Virus record (IMG/VR): IMGVR_UViG_3300043464_002284
Coordinates: 173,916-237,915 of that record
Length of the DNA stretch: 64,000 nucleotides
Reading direction: 5' to 3' (one strand)
The notes beneath the pieces are model-generated. The model worked only from the letters and a program-made list of their open reading frames with translations, was not told the origin of the DNA and searched no databases. The position numbers and the translations under genes were made by a program. This document shows, piece after piece, positions 2,223-64,000 of the stretch (the first letter of the stretch is position 1; every line of letters begins with the position of its first letter).

Positions 2223-2295
2223 GGGGCGTTCGTCTAATGGTCTAAGACGCTAGTCTTATTAACTAGCTAAGGGAGTTCGATTCTCTCACGCCCTA
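2223..2295 (+). tRNA. tRNA-Ile(UAU), CCA not encoded
   Basis: Acceptor GGGGCGT/ACGCCCT, D stem GTCT/AGAC, anticodon stem CTAGT/ACTAG with loop CTTATTA (anticodon TAT), T arm GGGAG-TTCGATT-CTCTC. Confidence 0.8.
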
Positions 2296-11599: not shown

Positions 11600-11674
11600 G
11601 GGAGCGTAGTCCAATTGGCAGCAGACAAAGGACTTAAAATCCTTCCAGTGTGGGTTCGAGTCCCACCGCTCCTA
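11600..11674 (+). tRNA. tRNA-Leu(UAA) with short variable region, CCA not encoded
   Basis: Acceptor GGGAGCG/CGCTCCT plus A; anticodon arm AAGGA-CTTAAAA-TCCTT; T arm GTGGG-TTCGAGT-CCCAC; variable region CCAGT. Confidence 0.9.
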
Positions 11675-11704
11675 CTTAATCCTTTTTAAAATGAGTTTAC
11701 TCTT

Positions 11705-54577: not shown

Positions 54578-54913
54578 ATGGTTAAACCTGGATATAGAAC
54601 TAGTGAATTTTGGTTTACTATGGTTAGCTTTATTTTTAGTGGACTTTATCTTGTTGGTCTTATAAGTGAAAATTCTCAAAAAGAAGATTTAATTCAAGAA
54701 ACTACCAGAGGAGTAGAAGCTACTATTCTTATTATAGGGCAATTAACGGTATTATTTAAATATATTAACGGAAGAACAGATCTTAAGAAAACTTGGTGGA
54801 GTACCGCAACACCCGAAGAAAGAAAAGTGGCAAATAAAGCAAATGATAGAAGCAAAAAGAAAACAACCAAAAAGAAACCAGTAACCAAAACCAAAGCTAA
54901 GCCATTGACCTAA
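54578..54913 (+). CDS. Holin-like membrane protein
   Basis: KPGYRTSEFW N-motif, two TMs, highly basic C-terminus. Confidence 0.6.
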   Translation: MVKPGYRTSEFWFTMVSFIFSGLYLVGLISENSQKEDLIQETTRGVEATILIIGQLTVLFKYINGRTDLKKTWWSTATPEERKVANKANDRSKKKTTKKKPVTKTKAKPLT

Positions 54914-54922
54914 TTTCTCTAT

Positions 54923-55387
54923 TTGGTGTATTCTATTATAACAATAGGAGTTTTTATGGATATTAATATTCTCGGTTTAGAACTATCTTCTAAGTTAGAA
55001 GATCTTGTGAATAAAGTTAAAAGCACCCTAGCTAATAGCAAATCTGTTGCTGTAACTCAAGCGTGGGGAATCCTACAACTTGCAGTAGCAGATACAGTAC
55101 AAGTTATTGAAGACAATAATCCTTCTTTGAAGGGATCTAGTAAAAAAGAAATTGCTTTGAGCATGATAAGTAATTTTTATGATAAGGTTTTTCTAGTGGT
55201 GAACATCCCCTTTGTTCCGGTCATGTTCCAGCCTATTATACAAAAGCACATCAAAGCTCTTTTGATGTTGTTGGTAAGTTCGACTATAGATTCTATGGTT
55301 GAAATTTTCAGGCAAACCGGTGTGTTTGAAGATCATAATACCGTTGATCCAAGTGTAGATAATACCCCAAAAGTTTCAGATAAATAA
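54923..55387 (+). CDS. Hypothetical protein; start probably ATG 54956
   Basis: AGGAG RBS before 54956; helical. Confidence 0.6.
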   Translation: MVYSIITIGVFMDINILGLELSSKLEDLVNKVKSTLANSKSVAVTQAWGILQLAVADTVQVIEDNNPSLKGSSKKEIALSMISNFYDKVFLVVNIPFVPVMFQPIIQKHIKALLMLLVSSTIDSMVEIFRQTGVFEDHNTVDPSVDNTPKVSDK

Positions 55388-55402
55388 AACGAGGAATATA
55401 AA

Positions 55403-55801
55403 ATGAATTTTACAGAAAGCTTTCAAGAGTTTAGTAGCAAGTTGAGCACAACGGATTTGGCTCTTTACGCTGGTGTAGGTTTAGTGTTATGGGTACTATT
55501 TAAGGATAAACTTAGTCCCGTACAACAACTACTAACTTCTGTTATGGACAGAGTTAAGGGCTTAACGTCTGGTGGTGGAATGAAGCTACCAACAGTTGAT
55601 GTTCCAAAGTTTGACCCAGTTGTACTACCTAAAGCAGTCGGTGATAAAGATGATATATTTTTTAAGCTTGTGGTATCATGGAAGCAAACTCGTGATTTAG
55701 CAGAAAAGAGTGGCTGTGCCGAAGCTATTAAGGTTGCCGATCAGATGTTTCCATTTCTAAGTCCTAATGTATGTGCTAAAAAAGAGGATAAAGTTGTATG
55801 A
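55403..55801 (+). CDS. Single-TM hypothetical protein
   Basis: GAGG RBS; one TM. Confidence 0.6.
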   Translation: MNFTESFQEFSSKLSTTDLALYAGVGLVLWVLFKDKLSPVQQLLTSVMDRVKGLTSGGGMKLPTVDVPKFDPVVLPKAVGDKDDIFFKLVVSWKQTRDLAEKSGCAEAIKVADQMFPFLSPNVCAKKEDKVV

Positions 55802-56292
55802 AAAACAATAATTTATTACTAGTAGTTGCTGGCTTACTTATTCTGGTTGGATTAACTAAGTTTGATTTCTCAGGATTCAATATTCTGCCAAATAGACCCA
55901 ATGTTGTTGATGTATTAGAACTACCAGAACCAACAGACGAAACTGTTAAAAAAGAAGCTGATGATGTTGTTGCAGTATTAAAAGAGTCTGGAGCAAAGGG
56001 TGATGCTAAGAGATTAAGAGACCTATATCTTGATCTAGCAAAGCTTGTTGAGCTTGACGGAGAAAACGAAGTAGTTAAGAGTACAGAAGAAATTCGCCAA
56101 GCAAATAGTTTAGCTGGTGTTATGCTTAGACTAGACATTAAAGGCAAATATCCCAATCTAGCAAAAGAGGCAAAAGAAGTAGTTGTTGCTTCAATTGGCG
56201 ATGATCAAATTCTATTATCTAAAGAGCTAAGAGTTAAAGCCGTAGAAGGCCTTAATGCTTTAGCTTGGGCTTGTAATATGGGGTCAAAATAA
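55798..56292 (+). CDS. Membrane-anchored/secreted hypothetical protein
   Basis: N-terminal hydrophobic segment; ATGA overlap. Confidence 0.6.
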   Translation: MKNNNLLLVVAGLLILVGLTKFDFSGFNILPNRPNVVDVLELPEPTDETVKKEADDVVAVLKESGAKGDAKRLRDLYLDLAKLVELDGENEVVKSTEEIRQANSLAGVMLRLDIKGKYPNLAKEAKEVVVASIGDDQILLSKELRVKAVEGLNALAWACNMGSK

Positions 56293-57215
56293 TGCCAAGA
56301 CTATCTCCAAAAGAACTATACGATAATTATCGCAAAGGATTCAGCGGGTGCTTATGGGAACAGCACATATACGATGCTTTAATGGAACACTCTAAGTATC
56401 CATTATTTGGTGATGCTAGTAAAAAAATTAGCGGTAGTGGTAAAGGTAAACTTTCAACACCATACAAGAGCGTATTAAAATTTGATAAGCATCCTTATAA
56501 CGAAAGACAAACCACTGGGGATTGTGTTAGTCATGGAACACGAAATGCTTGTGACGTTTCGCGGGCAGTAGAAATAGATATACATAATGAGAGAGAAGAC
56601 TGGATAGCAAGGGGTGCAACAGAGGCTATCTATGGATATAGAGGATTCAGTGGACAAGGCATGAGTTGTGCAAGAGCAGCTGAATTTGTTAGTAAGGTTG
56701 GTGGCCTTGTTGTTAGAAAGAATTACGGCTTTGTAGACTTCAGTAAATACAATGGTAATTTAGGAGCGGGCTGGGGCGGTAGGGGTCTCCCTGATAAAGT
56801 ATTAGATCTTTCTAATGACCACCAAATTAAGACGGCTTCACTGATTAGAACAGTAGAAGAAGCTCGTGATGCTCTTGCTAATGGTTATGGATTAGCAGTA
56901 TGTTCTAATTATGGATTTAGTAATACCAGAGATAAAAAGGGATTTGCTAGAACATCTGGTAACTGGGCTCATTGTATGGCTTGGATAGCATGTGACGATA
57001 CTGGTAGTGAGCCAGCATTCTTAGTACAAAATAGCTGGGGTAAATGGAATGACGGAGGACATCCAGAATGGGGACCTATTCCAGAAGGGTCATTTTTAAT
57101 TCATGCTGATGCTGCTGCTGGAATGTTATCAGCTAATGGTTCTTATGCTTTTAGTGGTTTTGATGGTTTTCCTCTTCAAAAACTACCAAGTTATGGATTT
57201 GACGACTATTTGTAG
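56292..57215 (+). CDS. Papain-like cysteine peptidase (C1-like)
   Basis: QTTGDCVSHG (Gln oxyanion plus Cys), WAHCMAWIA (His), LVQNSWG (Asn). Confidence 0.88.
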   Translation: MPRLSPKELYDNYRKGFSGCLWEQHIYDALMEHSKYPLFGDASKKISGSGKGKLSTPYKSVLKFDKHPYNERQTTGDCVSHGTRNACDVSRAVEIDIHNEREDWIARGATEAIYGYRGFSGQGMSCARAAEFVSKVGGLVVRKNYGFVDFSKYNGNLGAGWGGRGLPDKVLDLSNDHQIKTASLIRTVEEARDALANGYGLAVCSNYGFSNTRDKKGFARTSGNWAHCMAWIACDDTGSEPAFLVQNSWGKWNDGGHPEWGPIPEGSFLIHADAAAGMLSANGSYAFSGFDGFPLQKLPSYGFDDYL

Positions 57216-57496: not shown

Positions 57497-57829
57497 ATGA
57501 ATAAATTATTTATAGGTCTATTTTGCGTTAGCCTATTGTTTACTGGATCTAACTACTATGGGTCAACAACAGCCCCAGTAACTCTTGCTGGAGGAATTAT
57601 TAAAGCCAAGCATACACAGGAGAGTGTCTCAAAATATAAAAGAAAAGATTGTCCAGTTTGCAAGGGTAAAGGATATTATATTAGTGGAGATGGTATTCTT
57701 AAAATAGATTGCACATATTGCGAACCAGACAAAGGAGCTATTACTGTTGGACCAATAAAATCTATAACCCCAACACAAAAAACACCATCTAAAAATAGTT
57801 GCATTACTGGCCAGTGTCCTTTAAAATAA
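57497..57829 (+). CDS. Secreted protein with DnaJ-type CxxCxGxG zinc motif
   Basis: Signal peptide; CPVCKGKG...CTYC. Confidence 0.65.
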   Translation: MNKLFIGLFCVSLLFTGSNYYGSTTAPVTLAGGIIKAKHTQESVSKYKRKDCPVCKGKGYYISGDGILKIDCTYCEPDKGAITVGPIKSITPTQKTPSKNSCITGQCPLK

Positions 57830-57886: not shown

Positions 57887-58798
57887 ATGGCCAAACAATT
57901 AGATCCATTTGTAAAATTTGTGGGACAAATATGTCGCAAGTGTTGCGATTGTAGGATATTAGACCCAAATGGAACCAACCCAAATTTAAAGTGCTGTAAT
58001 AGTTTGGAAGGAGTTACGCCACAATGTTACGATCCCAAAGACAGTTGTATGGAATGCATAGATGTATTCCCGGCGCCTGCTGCAAATTCAAATGAACCAA
58101 AACAAAAATTAGTACCTAAATGCCAAGAACAATCATTAAAATTTGTACATGAAAATAAAAACAAATGTTGTGATGGTGAATGTTATGATAATTGTAGTGA
58201 GTGTATAGAGAAAAAAGTTCAATTAAAATTTAATAATAGTACACCCCCCGCAAAAAAAGAATCAAAAACCGATCCAGACAAGATATATATCTGTTGTGGT
58301 GGAACAACAGTCTCAGCCCCCAAAAGAGAAGCTGATTGTTATGAGTGTGTAGATACACTAGAAAAATACATCTTAAATGATGGCAGAGAAGTTACATATA
58401 CTAAGAGTGTTCCAAGACTAAAAGAACCACCACAGGGCAAAACAACATGCTGTTACGGAGAATGGTATGATCCTAAGGAACCCTGCGATACATGCGACGA
58501 TGATGGAAAAAAATTAATCAAATTAGCATGCAATCCGCCTAAATTTGCAACAAACATATGGGATTATGTGCTTAATAAGGCATGCTGTAATGGTGAATGT
58601 TATAATCCAACATGTTATGACTGTATTAAAACAGAAGCTGGTACTTCGACTATAACACCAAAACTTGATTGCAAATGCTGTATTAATTATAGCTATCCGA
58701 TTTCAAGTCAATGTTGTAAGGGTAAACAATTGTGCTGTGTTGGTAGCTCATCTGAGCCTTCAGAATGCTATGATCCTAATTGCGATGTGTGTACCTAA
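57887..58798 (+). CDS. Cys-rich repeat protein
   Basis: Repeated CC..G.CY.P..C..C units. Confidence 0.75.
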   Translation: MAKQLDPFVKFVGQICRKCCDCRILDPNGTNPNLKCCNSLEGVTPQCYDPKDSCMECIDVFPAPAANSNEPKQKLVPKCQEQSLKFVHENKNKCCDGECYDNCSECIEKKVQLKFNNSTPPAKKESKTDPDKIYICCGGTTVSAPKREADCYECVDTLEKYILNDGREVTYTKSVPRLKEPPQGKTTCCYGEWYDPKEPCDTCDDDGKKLIKLACNPPKFATNIWDYVLNKACCNGECYNPTCYDCIKTEAGTSTITPKLDCKCCINYSYPISSQCCKGKQLCCVGSSSEPSECYDPNCDVCT

Positions 58799-58816
58799 TT
58801 TTTAAAGAAATATTTT

Positions 58817-61800
58817 ATGCCCGTTAAAAAAACAGTCTGCGAAAAACCACTCGAATGTTGCAAAGACCAAGCTACTCAAACAACGGAATGCTATGATCCA
58901 ACAAAATGTGAAGTTTGTGTTGGAGGAAAAGTTATCAAAGAGGCATCTAATAATGATGAATTAAAAAAGAAATGTAAAGAATGCCAGAAAACTGAAGTTA
59001 AAGATGTGGCTGATCCGACAATAGTCATTCATACACTGTATAATACAATTGATTTGTGTGATAATCCGGAATTTGGAACACAGAATAAGCCAAATTGTTG
59101 TTTTGGTACTTGTTGGAATGAAGATACTGATAAGTGTAAAAGATGTGACGCTACTCTTGGAGTAGTAGATAAATATGATAGCTTTAACATATGCGAAATA
59201 TGTGATCCAGCAACAGGAAACAAAATAACGAAACCATGCCCACAAGGCAAAGAATGTTGTCCTTCTCAATCTGAAGAATGTGTTGACATTTGTCATTGCG
59301 ATGGAGACAATACTATGACTCCTTGCGGCGCCTGTGGGTGTTGCGAACCATGCGAAAAATGTGAAAATGGAAATAAAATTACGGGCGCTTCAATTTCGTC
59401 ATCTGACGAATTTGAATGTAAAGTTTGTGACAAAGGAGAAAAAGTAAGCGCATGTGGAACTTGGGGTACGTGTTGTGGCGGAAAATGTATTAGCAATAAT
59501 GCTTCGGCTTGTGAATATTGTGGTTATTCCGGTTCTCCAACAAGTACTTGTACTAATTTCAGTCCAAATTGTTGTGGTACTGAATGTTGGAATCAAGATA
59601 CTGATAGGTGTTACAAGTGCGTGTCGGGTCCAAATAGGCCTCCAGTATTGGTTGCAAAATGTGGTATTTCGGATCCTAACCATATAGCAGATAAGCCGTT
59701 ATGTTGTAATGGTCAGTGTTACGATCCGAAAGGATGCGAGATATGCATTAATAATACCACTCTGAGATACATTATAGAAACTGATTCAGAAGGCTGCTGT
59801 ACTAATTATGATGGCGATAGAATAGTTTCAAGAAAATATACAAAAGCTACACATACTTGCTGTAATGGAGATATAGTTCCAAAAAATGAGTGTTGTGGTA
59901 ATTCTAGAATAAATACTAATGGCATTAAATGTTGTAATGATCTACCATATAATACAGATACAGATATGTGCTGTGATAACAAAATAATCAAAAAAACAGA
60001 TGATATTGATTGTTGTGTATATAAAGATCCTGTGGGAGATATTTTTTTAGAAAGAACATATGAAACAAGATGTGAAAAATGCACAACAGACGGAGTCATC
60101 AAAACATATGATGAGGGATGCTATAGCTGTTCATGGGAAGAAGGTCCAGTATTGATATGTGACAGTAAAAAACCTGACTGTTGTAGCTCCTGGAATATAG
60201 ACACAGCAAACGACAAAAAGGGGAAATGTTGGAATAAAGAACTACAAAAATGCGAGATGTGCGATGATGGTTCAATAGTCCCAGTAAAAGGATTAGTAGA
60301 ATTTCCTAGCTACGACCCACCTCATAAGACTGCTTTAGATGCCGATGACCTTCGTGGGGTAGCGACATGTTGCGGAGGAAAGTGGTACAGAAATACTGAC
60401 GATAGTTTACTCTTACAAGACTGGGCCCCTGAATTTCTTGAATTTCTTGGTCCGTTAAATATAGGACCAAAAACATGCTATGAGTGTATTAATGACTCAG
60501 TTGATAAATATTGTCTTTTTGAATATGACATTACCGAAAAACTATGGAAACCAAAAGATGTCAAAAAAGATCCAAAGATCGAATGCTGTATAGTTAATGG
60601 AGTAAGACAATGTTATAGTAAATGCGAATACAGATGCGTTCCAGACGGAAACACCTTCAAGCTTGAAGAAAACACCTCTGGATCATTGTCTCTAATACAA
60701 GATGTCACAAATGCTAAATTCAAATGTTGTCTTTTTACTCAAACACAATTCAATGAAAATTGTGAAATTTGCACCCCGATGGGCGTCTTGCCAAGATTAG
60801 ACTGTAAGTCTTGTTGTGATTATTTATGTTGCAAAAATGATTGTTGCGATGGTACTCCAGAATTTTGTTGTCCAGATAATTCTCCCAAATGTGTGGGTGG
60901 CGGTTTATGTTGCAAAAATGATGAAATAAAATGCGGATCGGTTTGCTGTCCATCAAATAGATGTAGTGGTAATGGTATCTGCTGTCCAGAGGGACAAGAA
61001 GTTTGCGGATCCTCTGGCGCATGCTGCCCAATAGGGTCTTGCTGCGCCAATGGAGAATGCGCATCTAGCAATCAAATTTGTTGTGGTGGATCTCCTAAAA
61101 ATCTCAATGAGTGCTCTGAATGCTGCAATAATACTTGTGTAAATACTTCACAAAAATGCTGTAACGATACTGATAATAATCAGTTTATCTGTAGCGATAA
61201 TCAAATATGTTGCGGTGATTCTTGTTGCAATAGCGGTGACGCATGTTGCGATGGAACTTGTTATAATTCGCTAAACTGCGAAAAATGTACAAATTTTGGT
61301 ATAGTAGGCCTAGAACTAAATGAAGCTTGTTGTGCTGGTATGACATATAGACCGATTGATTGTGAGAAATGTGAAAACGGAGTTAAAAAACCTTATATAA
61401 GTACTAGTAATGTCTGTTTTTGTTATAAAGGACAAGAATATTGTACATGTCCAATAGCTGGTTTGCGCATAGAAATAGATACGGAAAATACAGGACATTG
61501 CTGTGATGCTGCTACTTTTAAGGTTAGGCTGGTTAGTGCTTTGAGTGGTCAAGGCTCAATAATTGGTTCAGTTAATTTAAATAATTCAGATTCCTGCATC
61601 CCACCATTCAGACAAATAACTGTATCAGACGATGCAGCCAGGGATCTATTAAATAATTTAGTTGGACAAGATTGTTGTAATTTTAGGTTAGAATTAGTAT
61701 GCGACCCAACTGGATTCGGTGCCTTTCAGCCCTTCGGTCCTGATCAATGTCATACCTCCATAGCGAACGGAAGAGTCTTTAAGACACTATCTAACGGATC

Positions 61801-61876
61801 AGAATCACTGATATGGAGTGGGTATTTAGATAATACTGGAACATTTAATATTTGTGATGAAACACTATTACCATAA
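58817..61876 (+). CDS. Giant Cys-rich repeat protein (1019 aa)
   Basis: Many CC-x-G-x-C-[YW]...C-E-x-C repeats; distinct C-terminal domain; no signal peptide. Confidence 0.8.
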
Positions 61877-61893: not shown

Positions 61894-63051
61894 ATGGCAG
61901 AAATAGACATTAATAAAAGTAAACCAGATAAAGAAGTAGATAATAGCGACTTGTTCGTTAATTATCCATTTCAAGGACAAGGAAGAACTGATGGGGATAC
62001 TCCAGCAGAAATAGATAGATTAAATAATTTTGCTAATTTATTAGCTGGTAGGTTTTTTAGATCAAACAGAAATCCTGTCAATACTCCTACTCCTACTCCT
62101 AGTTACGGGGCTCCACCTACTCCAACCCCAACAAATAGTAGAACACCCACACAAACCAGAACTCCAACCCCAACCTTAACACCAACACAATCGGTCACCC
62201 CCACCTTAACAGTAACTCCCACAAGCACAATAACTCCTACGCTAACCGCATCTGTAAGTCCCACAAATACTCCGACGAATACTCCAACAGCAACAACCAC
62301 TCCTACTCCAACAGCTACTAGTACGGCTACGCCAACGGCTACGGCTTCAGCTACGCCAACAGTTACACCAACCAACACGCCAACTAACACACCAAGCGTT
62401 ACTGCAACGCCAACAGCAACAAATACAGCTACCCCAACCGTTACGCCAACAGTTACGCCAACGGCTACAGCGTCAGCTACTCCAACAGCCACAGTATCGG
62501 CTACTCCAACTAACACTTCAAGCGCCACACCTACTGTAACTCCAACGGCCACGGCTTCGGCTACTCCGACATCTACAGTAACCGCAACTCCAACTGAAAC
62601 TCCAACAGCTACCCCAACCAACACGCCAACTAACACACCAAGCATAACACCCACAGAAACTCCTACTAATACTCCGTCGGTAACGCCTACTAACACATCA
62701 ACAGTCACAGCTACTCCAACAGCCACCCCAACCCCATCAGCATACTCTGGTTTTGATGTATATCTTGGCATAACATCAGGGAACTATGTTTCTGGCGGCG
62801 GAGTAACTCTATATGGAGCAACTGGTAGTCGTTTATATTTTGACGAGCTATCTTCGATTAATAATCCTTTGAACTTTACAGAAATTAGATTATACATAAA
62901 CAATACATATACTTATCGAATGACGGTATTCACTGAAATCATAACGGCAAACCTACCATTTGTATTAATATCTAGTACTGGTGTCGTATATCAGTCTAGT
63001 TTTGGGGCAGGATATAGTGTTGGAGCAGATAGGAGAATAGATTTAGTCTAA
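61894..63051 (+). CDS. Mucin-like Pro/Thr-repeat protein
   Basis: About 200 residues of TP/TAT/TVT repeats between globular ends. Confidence 0.85.
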
Positions 63052-63062
63052 ACGGATATAAT

Positions 63063-64000
63063 ATGAAACAAGATAAACAAATAATAGACGACCTATCTGC
63101 TTTATATGTACCACCAGCTCCGGGCGGCGGTCCACCTCCAGGCGGACCTCCACCCCCACCAGGACCGGGTGGGTATGTCGGCCAACCATGGAATATTAAT
63201 GCTGGTAAAATTTTAACAGAATATCTAGGCACTGATATTATTTCTATTGACTCTTTAAATAGTTTACAGTATATAGATAAAATTTGTAAATATGTTAATG
63301 GTTCTCTTATTTGCTGGGATGGGGACGAGCCATCTTTTTTAAGAGGTTTTAGTACATTAGATCCTAATACTGGTTATTTAATATTATCTAAAAGTTCTGC
63401 TGTCTTTCCTTATGTTATCTGGTACTACGATCCTGTAGTTCCATCAACGAGATCCATAACATCAGCTTATCAGATAGTCACATACCTAGGTTCTGAATTA
63501 GTATTAGATGACAACCCAGACTTTATCAATAACATTGTCAAAATTTTTAATCTCAACAATAACAGTCCGTTAACATGGATTAAAGCAGAACCATCTTTTG
63601 CTCAAGGGTTTGGTTCTTTGGAGTACGGCAAGACCTACTTATTTGTAAGCTCCAACACACCGTACTTGCTATATAATAGTGTCACGCCTACCCCAACAGC
63701 CACACAAACACAAACTCCTACAATCACGCCAACCAGCACGGCTACGCCAACAGCCACAGCGTCAGCTACTCCAACAGCAACAGCCACGGTAACTCCAACT
63801 GAAACCCCAACAGTTACCCCAACCGAAACACCTACTAACACGCCCAGTGTAACTCCCACTGAAACACCAACAGCAACCAGCACGGCTACGCCAACAGCCA
63901 CAGCGTCAGCTACTCCAACAGCAACAGCCACGGTAACTCCAACTGAAACCCCAACAGTTACCCCAACCGAAACACCTACTAACACGCCCAGTGTAACTCC
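63063..64000 (+). CDS. Second mucin-like Pro/Thr-repeat protein, 3'-partial (not in track)
   Basis: Open from ATG 63063 to the window end; Pro/Gly N-terminus, duplicated YLG...I.KI...N...W...EPSF..GF..L...Y domain, then TP repeats. Confidence 0.85.
63731..64000 (+). repeat. Exact 144-bp intragenic tandem duplication (48 codons)
   Basis: aaccagcacggctacgcc... starts at 63731 and 63875; identical to the window end. Confidence 0.9.

What the first reader, a model, noticed from the sequence alone, without database searches (positions are those of the whole stretch)
57887..61876. Tandem giant cysteine-rich repeat proteins without signal peptides
These 303- and 1019-aa proteins are built from CC-x(1-3)-G-x-C-[YW]-x-P-x(2-3)-C-x2-C units; a hand count gives about 15% Cys in the first 190 aa of the larger. 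They are made in the cytoplasm, so the Cys must bind metal or oxidise after lysis into a disulfide-stiffened rod. The larger ends in a distinct beta domain that may bind receptor. This does not match a standard tail-fibre repeat.
Basis: partly seen in the sequence, partly recalled or inferred. Interest (0 to 1): 0.65.

Follow-up and report, generated by a model that had tools for sequence, protein, structure and literature searches.

The report
Cysteine-stapled fibre proteins of lake phages
Two adjacent genes of a 238-kb lake-water phage encode proteins that are 13-14 % cysteine. They are predicted to form long rods of small beta hairpins, one ending in a swappable beta-sandwich knob. This protein family is found only in related phages, has never been described, and raises the question of how a virus assembled in the reducing cytoplasm could form about 90 disulfide bonds.

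Summary
ORF A (57887-58798, 303 aa, 39 Cys) and ORF B (58817-61876, 1019 aa, 142 Cys) are the two most Cys-rich of 302 ORFs in a genome that averages 1.6 % Cys. Neither has an N-terminal hydrophobic segment.

A repeat profile finds the unit (consensus KCP-x4-CCNGECYDP-x-KCE-x-C) about 10 times in B and 5 times in A.

B belongs to a family of at least 15 sequence clusters, all metagenomic and unnamed. The family always follows an A-like paralogue and always leads a block of giant lectin, Ig, fn3 and RCC1 virion-type genes.

AlphaFold models (pLDDT 73-83) show stacked two-stranded hairpins and a C-terminal beta-sandwich. No solved structure matches significantly.

Only B residues about 330-400 are related to a named family, Pfam Galaxin_repeat (hhalign 97 %).

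The cysteines are frozen: none of 181 changed at 13 % protein divergence. The loops of A and B 1-660 evolve almost neutrally (non-Cys dN/dS 0.7-0.8). The C-terminal domain is exchanged between family members.

Best reading: a disulfide-stapled surface fibre or adhesin of the virion, oxidised after lysis. Presence in the virion, disulfide bonds and the host are all unproven.

The parts
57887..58798 (+). ORF A: 303 aa, 39 Cys, five repeat units, no C-terminal knob. It is a paralogue of the N-terminal part of B.
   Evidence: hhalign of the A family against the B N-terminus gives 97.7 %, E 2.2e-12. A-like genes of 273-303 aa precede B-like genes in every relative examined.
58817..59776 (+). B residues 1-320: a conserved N-terminal cap (about 40 aa), then six-Cys units C..CC-x-G-x-C-[YW]-[DN]..C-x2-C with interspersed CxxC hairpins.
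   Evidence: Cys spacing string, unit HMM, AF2 hairpins at pLDDT 72.7. The N-terminal 40 aa are among the best conserved non-Cys stretches of the stalk across 15 members.
59795..60016 (+). B residues 327-400: six CC pairs spaced 9-19 residues apart, a galaxin-like di-Cys repeat.
   Evidence: Profile hits to PF24748 proteins. 7 of 15 family members hit PF24748, best E 4e-10. hhalign 97.4 %, E 1.6e-11. B alone gives no Pfam hit.
60071..60796 (+). B residues 419-660: further six-Cys units, with a Cys-poor insertion (about 500-560) that many relatives lack. This is the fastest-evolving part.
   Evidence: Windowed dN/dS reaches 0.92 at residues 501-600.
60797..61444 (+). B residues 661-876: a dense CC/C hairpin stack (spacing CC-x6-C-x5-CC and similar), then two final units. 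Under strong purifying selection.
   Evidence: AF2 pLDDT 85-96. dN/dS 0.07. Weak shape similarity to galaxin and granulin clusters, TM 0.20.
61445..61876 (+). B residues 877-1019 plus stop: C-terminal beta-sandwich domain with motifs GHCCDAA-F, INLNN, DCC-F and FGP-x-QCH.
   Evidence: AF2. VIA-align Z <= 5.8 to PLAT, hemocyanin-C and CBM-type sandwiches. More than 80 % identical in P0002-P0004, where the stalk is about 35 %. Replaced by unrelated domains in P0007, P0009, P0011 and P0013-P0018. Stand-alone homologues P0029-P0031 and P0049.
57497..57829 (+). Context: conserved 110-aa neighbour with an N-terminal hydrophobic segment and a CxxCxGxG..CxxC motif. It always lies just upstream of the A-like gene.
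   Evidence: Pfam DnaJ_CXXCXGXG at E 0.027, below cut-off. 78 % identical to the L002 homologue. Synteny.
61894..63051 (+). Context: first gene of the downstream adhesin-like block, a 385-aa protein with a long Thr/Pro linker.
   Evidence: The block continues across the contig junction with RCC1, DUF642/PA-IL, Hoc-like, LamG, fn3 and Gly_rich giant proteins.

Best explanation
A and B are surface appendage proteins of the virion of a roughly 238-kb freshwater phage.

Structure. Each chain folds into an elongated, probably monomeric rod of small beta hairpins. The frozen cysteines hold the rod together as disulfide bonds. The loops between them are free to vary.

B in detail. B carries a conserved N-terminal cap, which may be the attachment end. 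It also has a rigid, conserved distal stack (residues 661-876) and an exchangeable beta-sandwich knob (877-1019) that most likely binds a host-surface ligand.

A. A is a shorter paralogue without a knob, made together with B. It may be a partner or a second fibril.

Oxidation. The proteins are made without a signal peptide and the phage encodes no recognisable thiol oxidase. The cysteines would therefore stay reduced, or transiently metal-bound, in the cell and oxidise once lysis exposes the particle to oxic lake water.

What is shown and what is inferred. Shown: sequence anatomy, family, synteny, selection pattern and predicted fold. Inferred: virion location, disulfide state, timing of oxidation, binding function and monomeric state.
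For: 1. Frozen cysteines, free loops.
- 101 of B's 142 Cys are conserved in at least 13 of 15 family members. Mean column conservation is 0.84 for Cys and 0.34 for other residues.
- None of 181 Cys changed between the window and L012 at 13 % protein divergence.

2. Fold.
- The models are strings of two-stranded hairpins followed by a beta-sandwich, at pLDDT 83.3 and 72.7.
- The matches for the Cys-rich stalk, all weak, are extracellular or secreted disulfide-rich repeat proteins. They include LRP2, VWF, mucins, NELL, the Entamoeba Gal/GalNAc lectin, granulin, Ly6-type domains and galaxin.

3. Homology to a secreted family.
- B 330-400 is homologous to galaxin-like di-Cys repeats.
- Galaxin is a protein of the extracellular coral skeletal matrix (PMC3748352).
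- One bacterial hit, P0025, carries a T9SS sorting domain.

4. Genomic position.
- A and B lie on the same strand with 17-57 nt gaps. They sit downstream of a phage sigma factor, a ClpP-type head maturation protease and a protein with a tail-tip domain.
- They lie directly upstream of more than 25 kb of giant proteins. These carry RCC1, PA-IL/DUF642 lectin, Hoc-like Ig, LamG, fn3 and Gly_rich domains and hit PHROGs named tail protein, baseplate wedge subunit and virion structural protein.
- This order is conserved in all relatives examined.

5. Evolution typical of exposed proteins.
- Against L002 the neighbours are 72-96 % identical, A is 25 % and B is 34 %.
- Against L012 the neighbours have dN/dS 0.01-0.29. 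Non-Cys dN/dS is 0.82 for A and 0.67 for B 1-660.

6. Modular C-terminal domain.
- It is swapped on a conserved stalk.
- It also occurs as a stand-alone gene in other lake phage contigs.

7. Precedent.
- Functional disulfides occur in a freshwater phage virion: cyanophage Pam3 (PMC9942802).
Against: - There is no virion proteome, no cultured relative and no homologue in 50,697 deposited phage genomes. Virion location rests on gene neighbourhood only.
- I could not read model coordinates, so disulfide geometry was never checked.
- Total Cys counts are odd in 8 of 15 family members and in A (for B's relatives, for A). Not every Cys can be in an intrachain disulfide.
- No oxidoreductase of the Erv1, thioredoxin, glutaredoxin or DsbA-like kind is encoded. 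That leaves about 90 disulfides to form unaided.
- Between close relatives the C-terminal knob is conserved and the stalk is variable. This is opposite to classical receptor-binding tips.
- The trimer test gave no verdict.
- The beta-sandwich matches are generic, with Z <= 5.8.
Confidence: 0.5

Rival explanations
1. Metal-binding array. The cysteines coordinate Zn (or Fe/Cu) in the cytoplasm, as in zinc-ribbon or DnaJ-type fingers or metallothioneins. The proteins would then act inside the infected cell, or as metal-stabilised virion parts, without disulfides.
For: - No signal peptide.
- Many conserved CxxC pairs.
- Odd Cys totals in half of the family.
- The gene just upstream has a DnaJ-like CxxCxGxG motif.
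- No phage oxidase is encoded.
- The other Cys-rich ORFs of this genome are ordinary CxxC-rich zinc-finger-like (putative HNH-type) proteins by inspection only.
Against: - CxxC in B is not enriched beyond composition, while adjacent CC is doubled. CC pairs are typical of disulfide ladders, not of zinc knuckles (general knowledge).
- B has only 7 His.
- No Pfam zinc-finger family hits A or B.
- Part of B is homologous to secreted galaxin-type repeats.
- All weak fold matches for the Cys-rich stalk are disulfide-rich extracellular proteins.
- Near-neutral loop evolution and a position at the head of an adhesin block do not fit an intracellular metalloprotein.
Confidence: 0.15
2. Capsid decoration rather than tail fibre. 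B would be a monomeric Hoc-like fibril anchored on the head through one conserved end. It would mediate weak adherence to particles, mucus-like polymers or host glycans.
For: - The monomer models have high confidence without partners.
- A Hoc-like head decoration match occurs in the same block.
- No tail-fibre family match.
- The head maturation protease lies 8 kb upstream.
Against: - No homology to Hoc or to Ig-like domains in A or B.
- Nothing places the protein on the head rather than the tail.
- The nearest upstream structural hint is a tail-tip domain.
Confidence: 0.2
3. Not a virion part. The proteins would be released at lysis and act free in the water or on the host envelope, for example as a matrix binder, a decoy, or a superinfection or grazing deterrent.
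For: - Galaxin-type proteins are extracellular matrix components (PMC3748352).
- A lysis-like cluster of small membrane proteins lies just upstream. This rests on inspection of the translations only.
Against: - Conserved, tight linkage to structural-type giant genes.
- There is no precedent.
- A 1019-aa protein with a modular tip and a conserved cap looks like an attached appendage.
Confidence: 0.1

Closest known systems
Galaxin-like repeats (Pfam PF24748; coral skeletal matrix protein galaxin and relatives)
   Same: Tandem di-Cys (CC) pairs about 10-20 residues apart that form hairpin stacks. B 330-400 and the same region of its relatives align to galaxin-repeat proteins (hhalign 97.4 %). 7 of 15 relatives hit the Pfam model. 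The function of galaxin itself is unknown; a framework role has been proposed (PMC3748352).
   Different: This covers under 10 % of B and none of A. B itself does not reach the Pfam model. There is no signal peptide. The dominant unit (C..CC-x-G-x-C-[YW]-[DN]-P..C-x2-C) is not the galaxin unit. The setting is a phage, and no paper links galaxin repeats to phages.
Phage tail fibres and receptor-binding proteins (for example T4 gp37, T5 pb1, adenovirus-type shaft plus knob)
   Same: Long shaft plus C-terminal knob. The N-terminal cap is conserved. The C-terminal domain is exchanged between relatives. The gene lies among structural and adhesin genes. Divergence is fast. Weak architectural matches to adenovirus fibres.
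   Different: No sequence or fold homology. The shaft is predicted as a self-contained, disulfide-type hairpin stack of one chain, not an interwoven trimer. Trimerisation is untested. Between close relatives the shaft varies and the knob does not.
Disulfide-linked baseplate and fibres of freshwater cyanophage Pam3 (PMC9942802)
   Same: A tailed freshwater phage assembled in the cytoplasm whose virion depends on disulfide bonds. DTT detaches its fibres.
   Different: Pam3 uses a handful of inter-subunit disulfides between ordinary folds. Here two proteins carry 181 cysteines in a dedicated repeat scaffold. There is no sequence relation.
Eukaryotic extracellular Cys-rich repeat rods (granulin, Entamoeba Gal/GalNAc lectin heavy chain, EGF/LDLR-type arrays)
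   Same: Hairpin stacks pinned by conserved Cys, with variable loops. These are the top, weak structural neighbours.
   Different: No significant scores: Foldseek E >= 2e-3, TM about 0.1-0.2, VIA Z <= 2.4. The Cys spacing differs. Those proteins fold in the oxidising secretory pathway.

Membership tests
Galaxin-like repeat (PF24748) | Match to the curated Pfam model above its cut-off | tested here: not met
   B gives no Pfam family even at E <= 1. 7 of 15 relatives match, best E 4e-10.
Galaxin-like repeat (PF24748) | Tandem di-Cys pairs at regular spacing, and profile-level homology | tested here: met
   B 327-400 reads CC19-CC9-CC11-CC11-CC12-CC. hhalign of A5 against galaxin proteins gives 97.4 %, E 1.6e-11. 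The family profile retrieves PF24748 proteins at E 1e-19 to 1e-3.
Galaxin-like repeat (PF24748) | Secreted protein (signal peptide or sorting domain) | tested here: not met
   No hydrophobic N-terminus and no upstream extension possible.
Phage tail fibre / receptor-binding protein | Homology to a known fibre family or domain | tested here: not met
   No Pfam or PHROG hit. No tblastn hit in 50,697 phage records. No PDB sequence hit.
Phage tail fibre / receptor-binding protein | Homotrimeric assembly | tested here: inconclusive
   The complex job on B 815-1019 x3 gave no verdict.
Phage tail fibre / receptor-binding protein | Conserved attachment end, exchangeable distal domain, location in the structural module | tested here: met
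   The N-terminal 40 aa are among the best conserved parts of the stalk. C-terminal domains of several unrelated types sit on one stalk. The flanking genes are of structural or adhesin type.
Phage tail fibre / receptor-binding protein | Presence in the virion | not testable with these tools
   No cultured relative and no proteome.
Granulin (PF00396) | 12-Cys granulin motif and fold | tested here: not met
   No Pfam hit. Atlas TM 0.20. VIA Z 2.2 to zebrafish granulin.
Zinc-ribbon / DnaJ CR-type finger arrays | Paired CxxC knuckles (CxxCxGxG) recognised by family models | tested here: not met
   No such Pfam hit for A or B. CxxC in B is not above the shuffle expectation. Actual metal content is not testable here.

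The most novel reading that the evidence does not exclude
A clade of large freshwater phages has built a new kind of virion fibre from a cysteine framework. In this reading about 90 disulfides form without any dedicated oxidase after the particle leaves the cell. They lock a scaffold whose loops evolve almost freely, giving a hypervariable Cys-framework adhesin. That would be a bacteriophage counterpart of Giardia VSPs or conotoxin frameworks. It would also be the first galaxin-type repeat protein with an assignable role.
Probability: 0.3. Interest if true: 0.8.

Novelty: new variant of a known kind. Interest (0 to 1): 0.6.

Why it matters
Phage particles assemble in a reducing cytoplasm, and disulfide-rich architecture is regarded as a feature of secreted proteins. 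A conserved phage family with 13-17 % cysteine and no export signal would be a natural system for studying post-lysis oxidative maturation of a virion.

The family is also a new scaffold for host-range or adhesion proteins. It gives a foothold on the function of galaxin-type di-Cys repeats, which is still unknown in animals.

The frozen-cysteine, free-loop pattern suggests a compact and evolvable binding scaffold that could be of practical use.

The phage is abundant enough to be assembled repeatedly from lakes over eight years. Material for metaproteomics therefore exists.

Tried and rejected
Searches that found no relatives:
- blastn and tblastn of the region and of B against 50,697 phage records: no match.
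- Degenerate-pattern scans of IMG/VR (twice) and of one genome per prokaryote species (GTDB): no relatives. The window's own record may be excluded by design.
- ESM Atlas feature search with B 1-330: no usable hit.
- PDB sequence search with the family profile: nothing at E <= 1.

Structure searches:
- Foldseek against PDB with both models: nothing at E <= 1e-3.
- BFVD: one hit at 5e-4 (a Tetraselmis virus protein) and adenovirus fibres at 1e-3 to 1e-2 with TM about 0.1. I treat these as architectural only.
- VIA-align on the N-terminal model: Z <= 2.4.

Homotrimer prediction for B 815-1019: no verdict. It is neither support nor evidence against.

Phage-encoded thiol oxidoreductases: Erv1/ALR, thioredoxin, glutaredoxin and DsbA-like Thioredoxin_4 are all absent.

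Host inference:
- RIIA is at most 36 % identical to cultured phages of many hosts.
- Shine-Dalgarno use is moderate, about 40 % of genes.
- The host stays unknown.

A-B fusion by stop-codon readthrough: A and B are in the same frame, TAA plus 6 codons apart, here and in L012. They overlap or are in different frames in L002, L016 and L017, so I rejected this idea.

Cys parity as a disulfide test: 7 members have even totals and 8 odd, so it is uninformative.

Galaxin homology:
- For A: rejected (hhalign 1.3 %).
- For the C-terminal part of B (alignment A2, B 640-1019): unconvincing. Probability was 71 %, and the aligned stretch was B ~821-905, the last repeat units and the start of the C-terminal domain, not the 661-815 stack.

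RNA runs: none holds the stretch, so expression is untested.
Full report
**1. What is in the sequence**

The window is the last 64 kb of a 237,915-bp IMG/VR virus record whose ends overlap by 81 bp, so the record is a closed assembly. The genome is a tailed-phage genome. It encodes:
- RIIA, an ATP-dependent ligase and HNH endonucleases;
- a sigma factor and a ClpP-type head maturation protease;
- two tRNAs.

- A has 39 Cys (12.9 %) and B has 142 (13.9 %). The first 190 residues of B are 14.7 % Cys.
- In a crude ORF call of the whole genome, mean Cys is 1.6 %, and A and B are the two top outliers of 302 ORFs.
- The other Cys-rich ORFs look like ordinary CxxC-rich zinc-finger (putative HNH-type) proteins by inspection only. 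None contains the repeat unit.

**2. The repeat**

A looser form matches 4 times in A and 5 times in B, against 0.04 and 0.22 in shuffles.

The string of Cys spacings shows the real unit: C-x(5-13)-CC-x3-C-x(5-7)-C-x2-C, with consensus KCP-x4-CCNGECYDP-x-KCE-x-C-x-NG-x-VVP. A profile of the unit finds 10 copies in B and 5 in A. That count is partly circular.

B has five zones:
- **Residues 1-320:** six-Cys units.
- **Residues 327-400:** six CC pairs.
- **Residues 419-660:** more units, with a Cys-poor insertion.
- **Residues 661-876:** a very dense CC/C stack followed by two units.
- **Residues 877-1019:** a domain with few Cys.

Neither protein has a hydrophobic N-terminus or a TM-like segment. 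Neither ORF can be extended upstream.

**3. The family**

A word-indexed search of 5.8 billion proteins found four full-length relatives of B at 30-36 % identity, on contigs of up to 231-241 kb. An exhaustive HMMER profile search of 1.84 billion cluster representatives gave 104 hits, 13 of them at E <= 1e-30.
- About 15 clusters are full-length relatives of 876-1029 aa with 12.6-17.5 % Cys.
- All are metagenomic and are unnamed or labelled 'hypothetical protein'.
- None is in the deposited phage collection, in IMG/VR beyond the window's own record, or in GTDB species genomes.

Conservation in the 15-member alignment:
- Cys columns are 84 % conserved and other columns 34 %.
- 101 of B's 142 Cys are kept in at least 13 of 15 members.
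- Across the Cys-rich stalk, the best conserved non-Cys stretches are the first 40 residues and residues 801-880.

C-terminal domain:
- It is of the window's type in P0002-P0005 and P0008.
- It is replaced by unrelated sequences in P0007, P0009, P0011 and P0013-P0018.
- It also occurs as stand-alone proteins of 125-225 aa in other lake phage-like contigs.

A has an 87 % identical homologue. It also has positional counterparts of 273-280 aa with aligned Cys. The A family is a paralogue of the N-terminal part of B (hhalign 97.7 %).

**4. Relation to known families**

A and B hit nothing in Pfam or PHROGs. The lower hits of the profile search are Pfam PF24748 Galaxin_repeat proteins (E 1e-55 to 1e-138 to that model). 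One of them is a bacterial reprolysin with a T9SS sorting domain.
- 7 of 15 family members match PF24748 over their first ~400-490 residues (the part aligned to B 1-420), best E 4e-10. B itself does not match.
- Profile-profile comparison of B 320-470 and its relatives with galaxin-repeat proteins gives 97.4 % probability, E 1.6e-11.
- The C-terminal part of B (B 640-1019, which contains the dense stack) and the A family show no convincing galaxin relation.

Galaxin is a coral skeletal matrix protein with di-Cys repeats. Its function is unknown (PMC3748352). No paper in the library links galaxin repeats to phages.

**5. Predicted structure**

With family alignments, AlphaFold2 gives two models:
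- B 640-1019: mean pLDDT 83.3, and above 90 through most of 760-860.
- B 1-420: mean pLDDT 72.7.

Both are chains of short two-stranded hairpins. The last 143 residues form a beta-sandwich with one helix.

Searches with these models found no significant relative:
- Foldseek against the PDB finds nothing at E <= 1e-3. The best rows for the Cys-rich stalk are extracellular Cys-rich repeat proteins: LRP2, VWF, mucins, NELL and the Entamoeba Gal/GalNAc lectin.
- The exhaustive VIA-align search puts the C-terminal domain with PLAT, hemocyanin-C, tyrosinase-C and CBM sandwiches at Z <= 5.8. That is within the noise band the tool itself describes.
- The N-terminal model reaches only Z 2.4.
- The Atlas shape search lists galaxin and granulin clusters for B 657-829 at TM 0.20.
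- BFVD lists adenovirus fibres at TM about 0.1.

So the models support a rod plus knob, and no solved relative was found. I could not read coordinates, so disulfide geometry is unchecked.

**6. Genomic setting**

A and B lie on the + strand with 17-57 nt gaps.

Upstream, in order:
- a sigma factor;
- the head maturation protease;
- a 462-aa protein with a weak tail-tip domain;
- small membrane proteins;
- a conserved 307-aa protein;
- a 110-aa protein with a hydrophobic N-terminus and a CxxCxGxG motif.

Downstream, continuing across the contig junction:
- a Thr/Pro-rich 385-aa protein;
- an RCC1 propeller;
- a DUF642/PA-IL lectin protein;
- a protein with Hoc-like Ig domains;
- several 860-1300-aa proteins, most of which carry LamG, fn3 or Gly_rich domains and hit PHROGs named tail protein, baseplate wedge subunit or virion structural protein.

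The order 307-aa gene, 60-70-aa gene, about 110-aa gene, A-like gene, B-like gene, then giant genes is kept in every relative examined.

**7. Evolution**

Against the related phage L002, the neighbouring proteins are 72-96 % identical, A is 25 % and B is 34 %.

Against the closer L012:

| Region | dN/dS |
|---|---|
| Neighbouring genes | 0.01-0.29 |
| A | 0.62 (0.82 without Cys codons) |
| B 1-660 | 0.48 (0.67 without Cys codons) |
| B 661-876 | 0.07 |
| B 877-1019 | 0.12 |

- None of the 181 Cys differs at 13 % protein divergence.
- The framework is therefore under very strong constraint.
- The loops of A and of the first two thirds of B evolve close to neutrality. That could reflect relaxation or diversifying selection, and these data cannot separate the two.
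- The locus is not unstable within a population. Contig pieces with 0-1 differences recur in lake metagenomes from separate studies between 2016 and 2024.

**8. Interpretation**

The most economical reading is a virion-surface appendage: a disulfide-stapled hairpin rod with a conserved cap, a rigid distal stack and an exchangeable binding knob. A would be a knob-less paralogue made alongside it.

The evidence is indirect but consistent:
- frozen Cys, doubled CC frequency and few His;
- homology and fold resemblance to secreted disulfide-rich proteins only;
- a position at the head of the adhesin and structural block;
- fast loop evolution and modular tips.

Functional disulfides in a cytoplasmically assembled freshwater phage have precedent in Pam3 (PMC9942802). 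The scale here would be of a different order.

No Erv1, thioredoxin, glutaredoxin or DsbA-like gene is present. Oxidation after lysis in oxic water is therefore the default inference. The adjacent DnaJ-CR-like 110-aa protein is a speculative helper.

The main rival is metal coordination. It fits the missing signal peptide and the odd Cys counts, but it fits the CC pattern, the homology and the evolutionary pattern poorly.

Open points:
- Whether the appendage sits on the tail or the head.
- Whether it is monomeric. The trimer job gave no verdict.
- The host remains unknown.

**9. Verdict**

The thing is an undescribed, phage-restricted protein family. I rate it a new variant of a known kind (virion fibre or adhesin) built on an unusual cysteine framework, with only a small galaxin-like segment tying it to anything named. 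Interest is 0.6.

Noticed in passing
window 56292-57215; L012 7193-9334; L016 6528-8549: The conserved 307-aa protein (92 % identical in L002) is interrupted by an intein in two related phages. There it is 713 and 673 aa, with Hom_end_hint, LAGLIDADG and Intein_splicing hits. Its function is unknown: there is no Pfam or PHROG hit, and the only PDB hint is phi92 gp138 at E 0.06.
   Followed up: partly
window 57497-57829: A 110-aa protein with a hydrophobic N-terminus and CPVCKGKG..CTYC (DnaJ-CR-like, below the Pfam cut-off) always lies just upstream of the A-like gene. In lake metagenomes its motif region (57554-57707) attracts contigs of many other phages, at about 10-20 times the depth of the flanks. 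It is a candidate folding helper for A and B, but this is pure speculation.
   Followed up: partly
window 58796-58819: A and B are in the same reading frame, separated by TAA plus six codons, here and in L012. In L002 the two genes abut: the A-like gene's stop ends on the first base of B's start codon. In L016 and L017 they are 2 and 13 nt apart. In all three they are in different frames, so readthrough fusion is not conserved.
   Followed up: yes
window 61894-64000 and G000 1-26719 (L005, L006): A long + strand block of giant adhesin-like proteins. It includes Thr/Pro-linker proteins, an RCC1 propeller (652 aa), a DUF642 + PA-IL lectin protein (1236 aa), a Hoc-like Ig protein (1107 aa) and LamG/fn3/Gly_rich proteins of 951-1299 aa. 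The Gly/Val-rich ORFs on the minus strand of 62103-63985 are antisense artefacts of the Thr/Pro repeats.
   Followed up: partly
window 54578-56292: A run of small proteins with predicted membrane segments. One is a 111-aa protein with two hydrophobic stretches and a very basic tail, which looks holin-like. This may be a lysis cassette. It rests only on inspection of the translations.
   Followed up: no
window 26293-46364: A large cluster of glycosyltransferase and dehydrogenase genes on both strands, in a lower-GC stretch (29-34 %). It may serve glycan modification of the host or the virion.
   Followed up: no
G000 54824-100883 (outside the window): Very large minus-strand ORFs of 6560, 2591, 2232 and 1833 aa elsewhere in the genome. 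Not examined.
   Followed up: no
L008 1427-2104; L009 365-829: Stand-alone homologues of B's C-terminal domain (motifs GHxCDAA, NLNN, DCC, CH) in other lake-water phage-like contigs. They lie next to thymidine kinase, HNH, and subtilisin- and trypsin-type peptidase genes.
   Followed up: partly
window 2223-2295 and 11600-11675: tRNA-Ile (TAT) and tRNA-Leu (TAA) genes, which match the A/T-rich codon usage of the phage.
   Followed up: no
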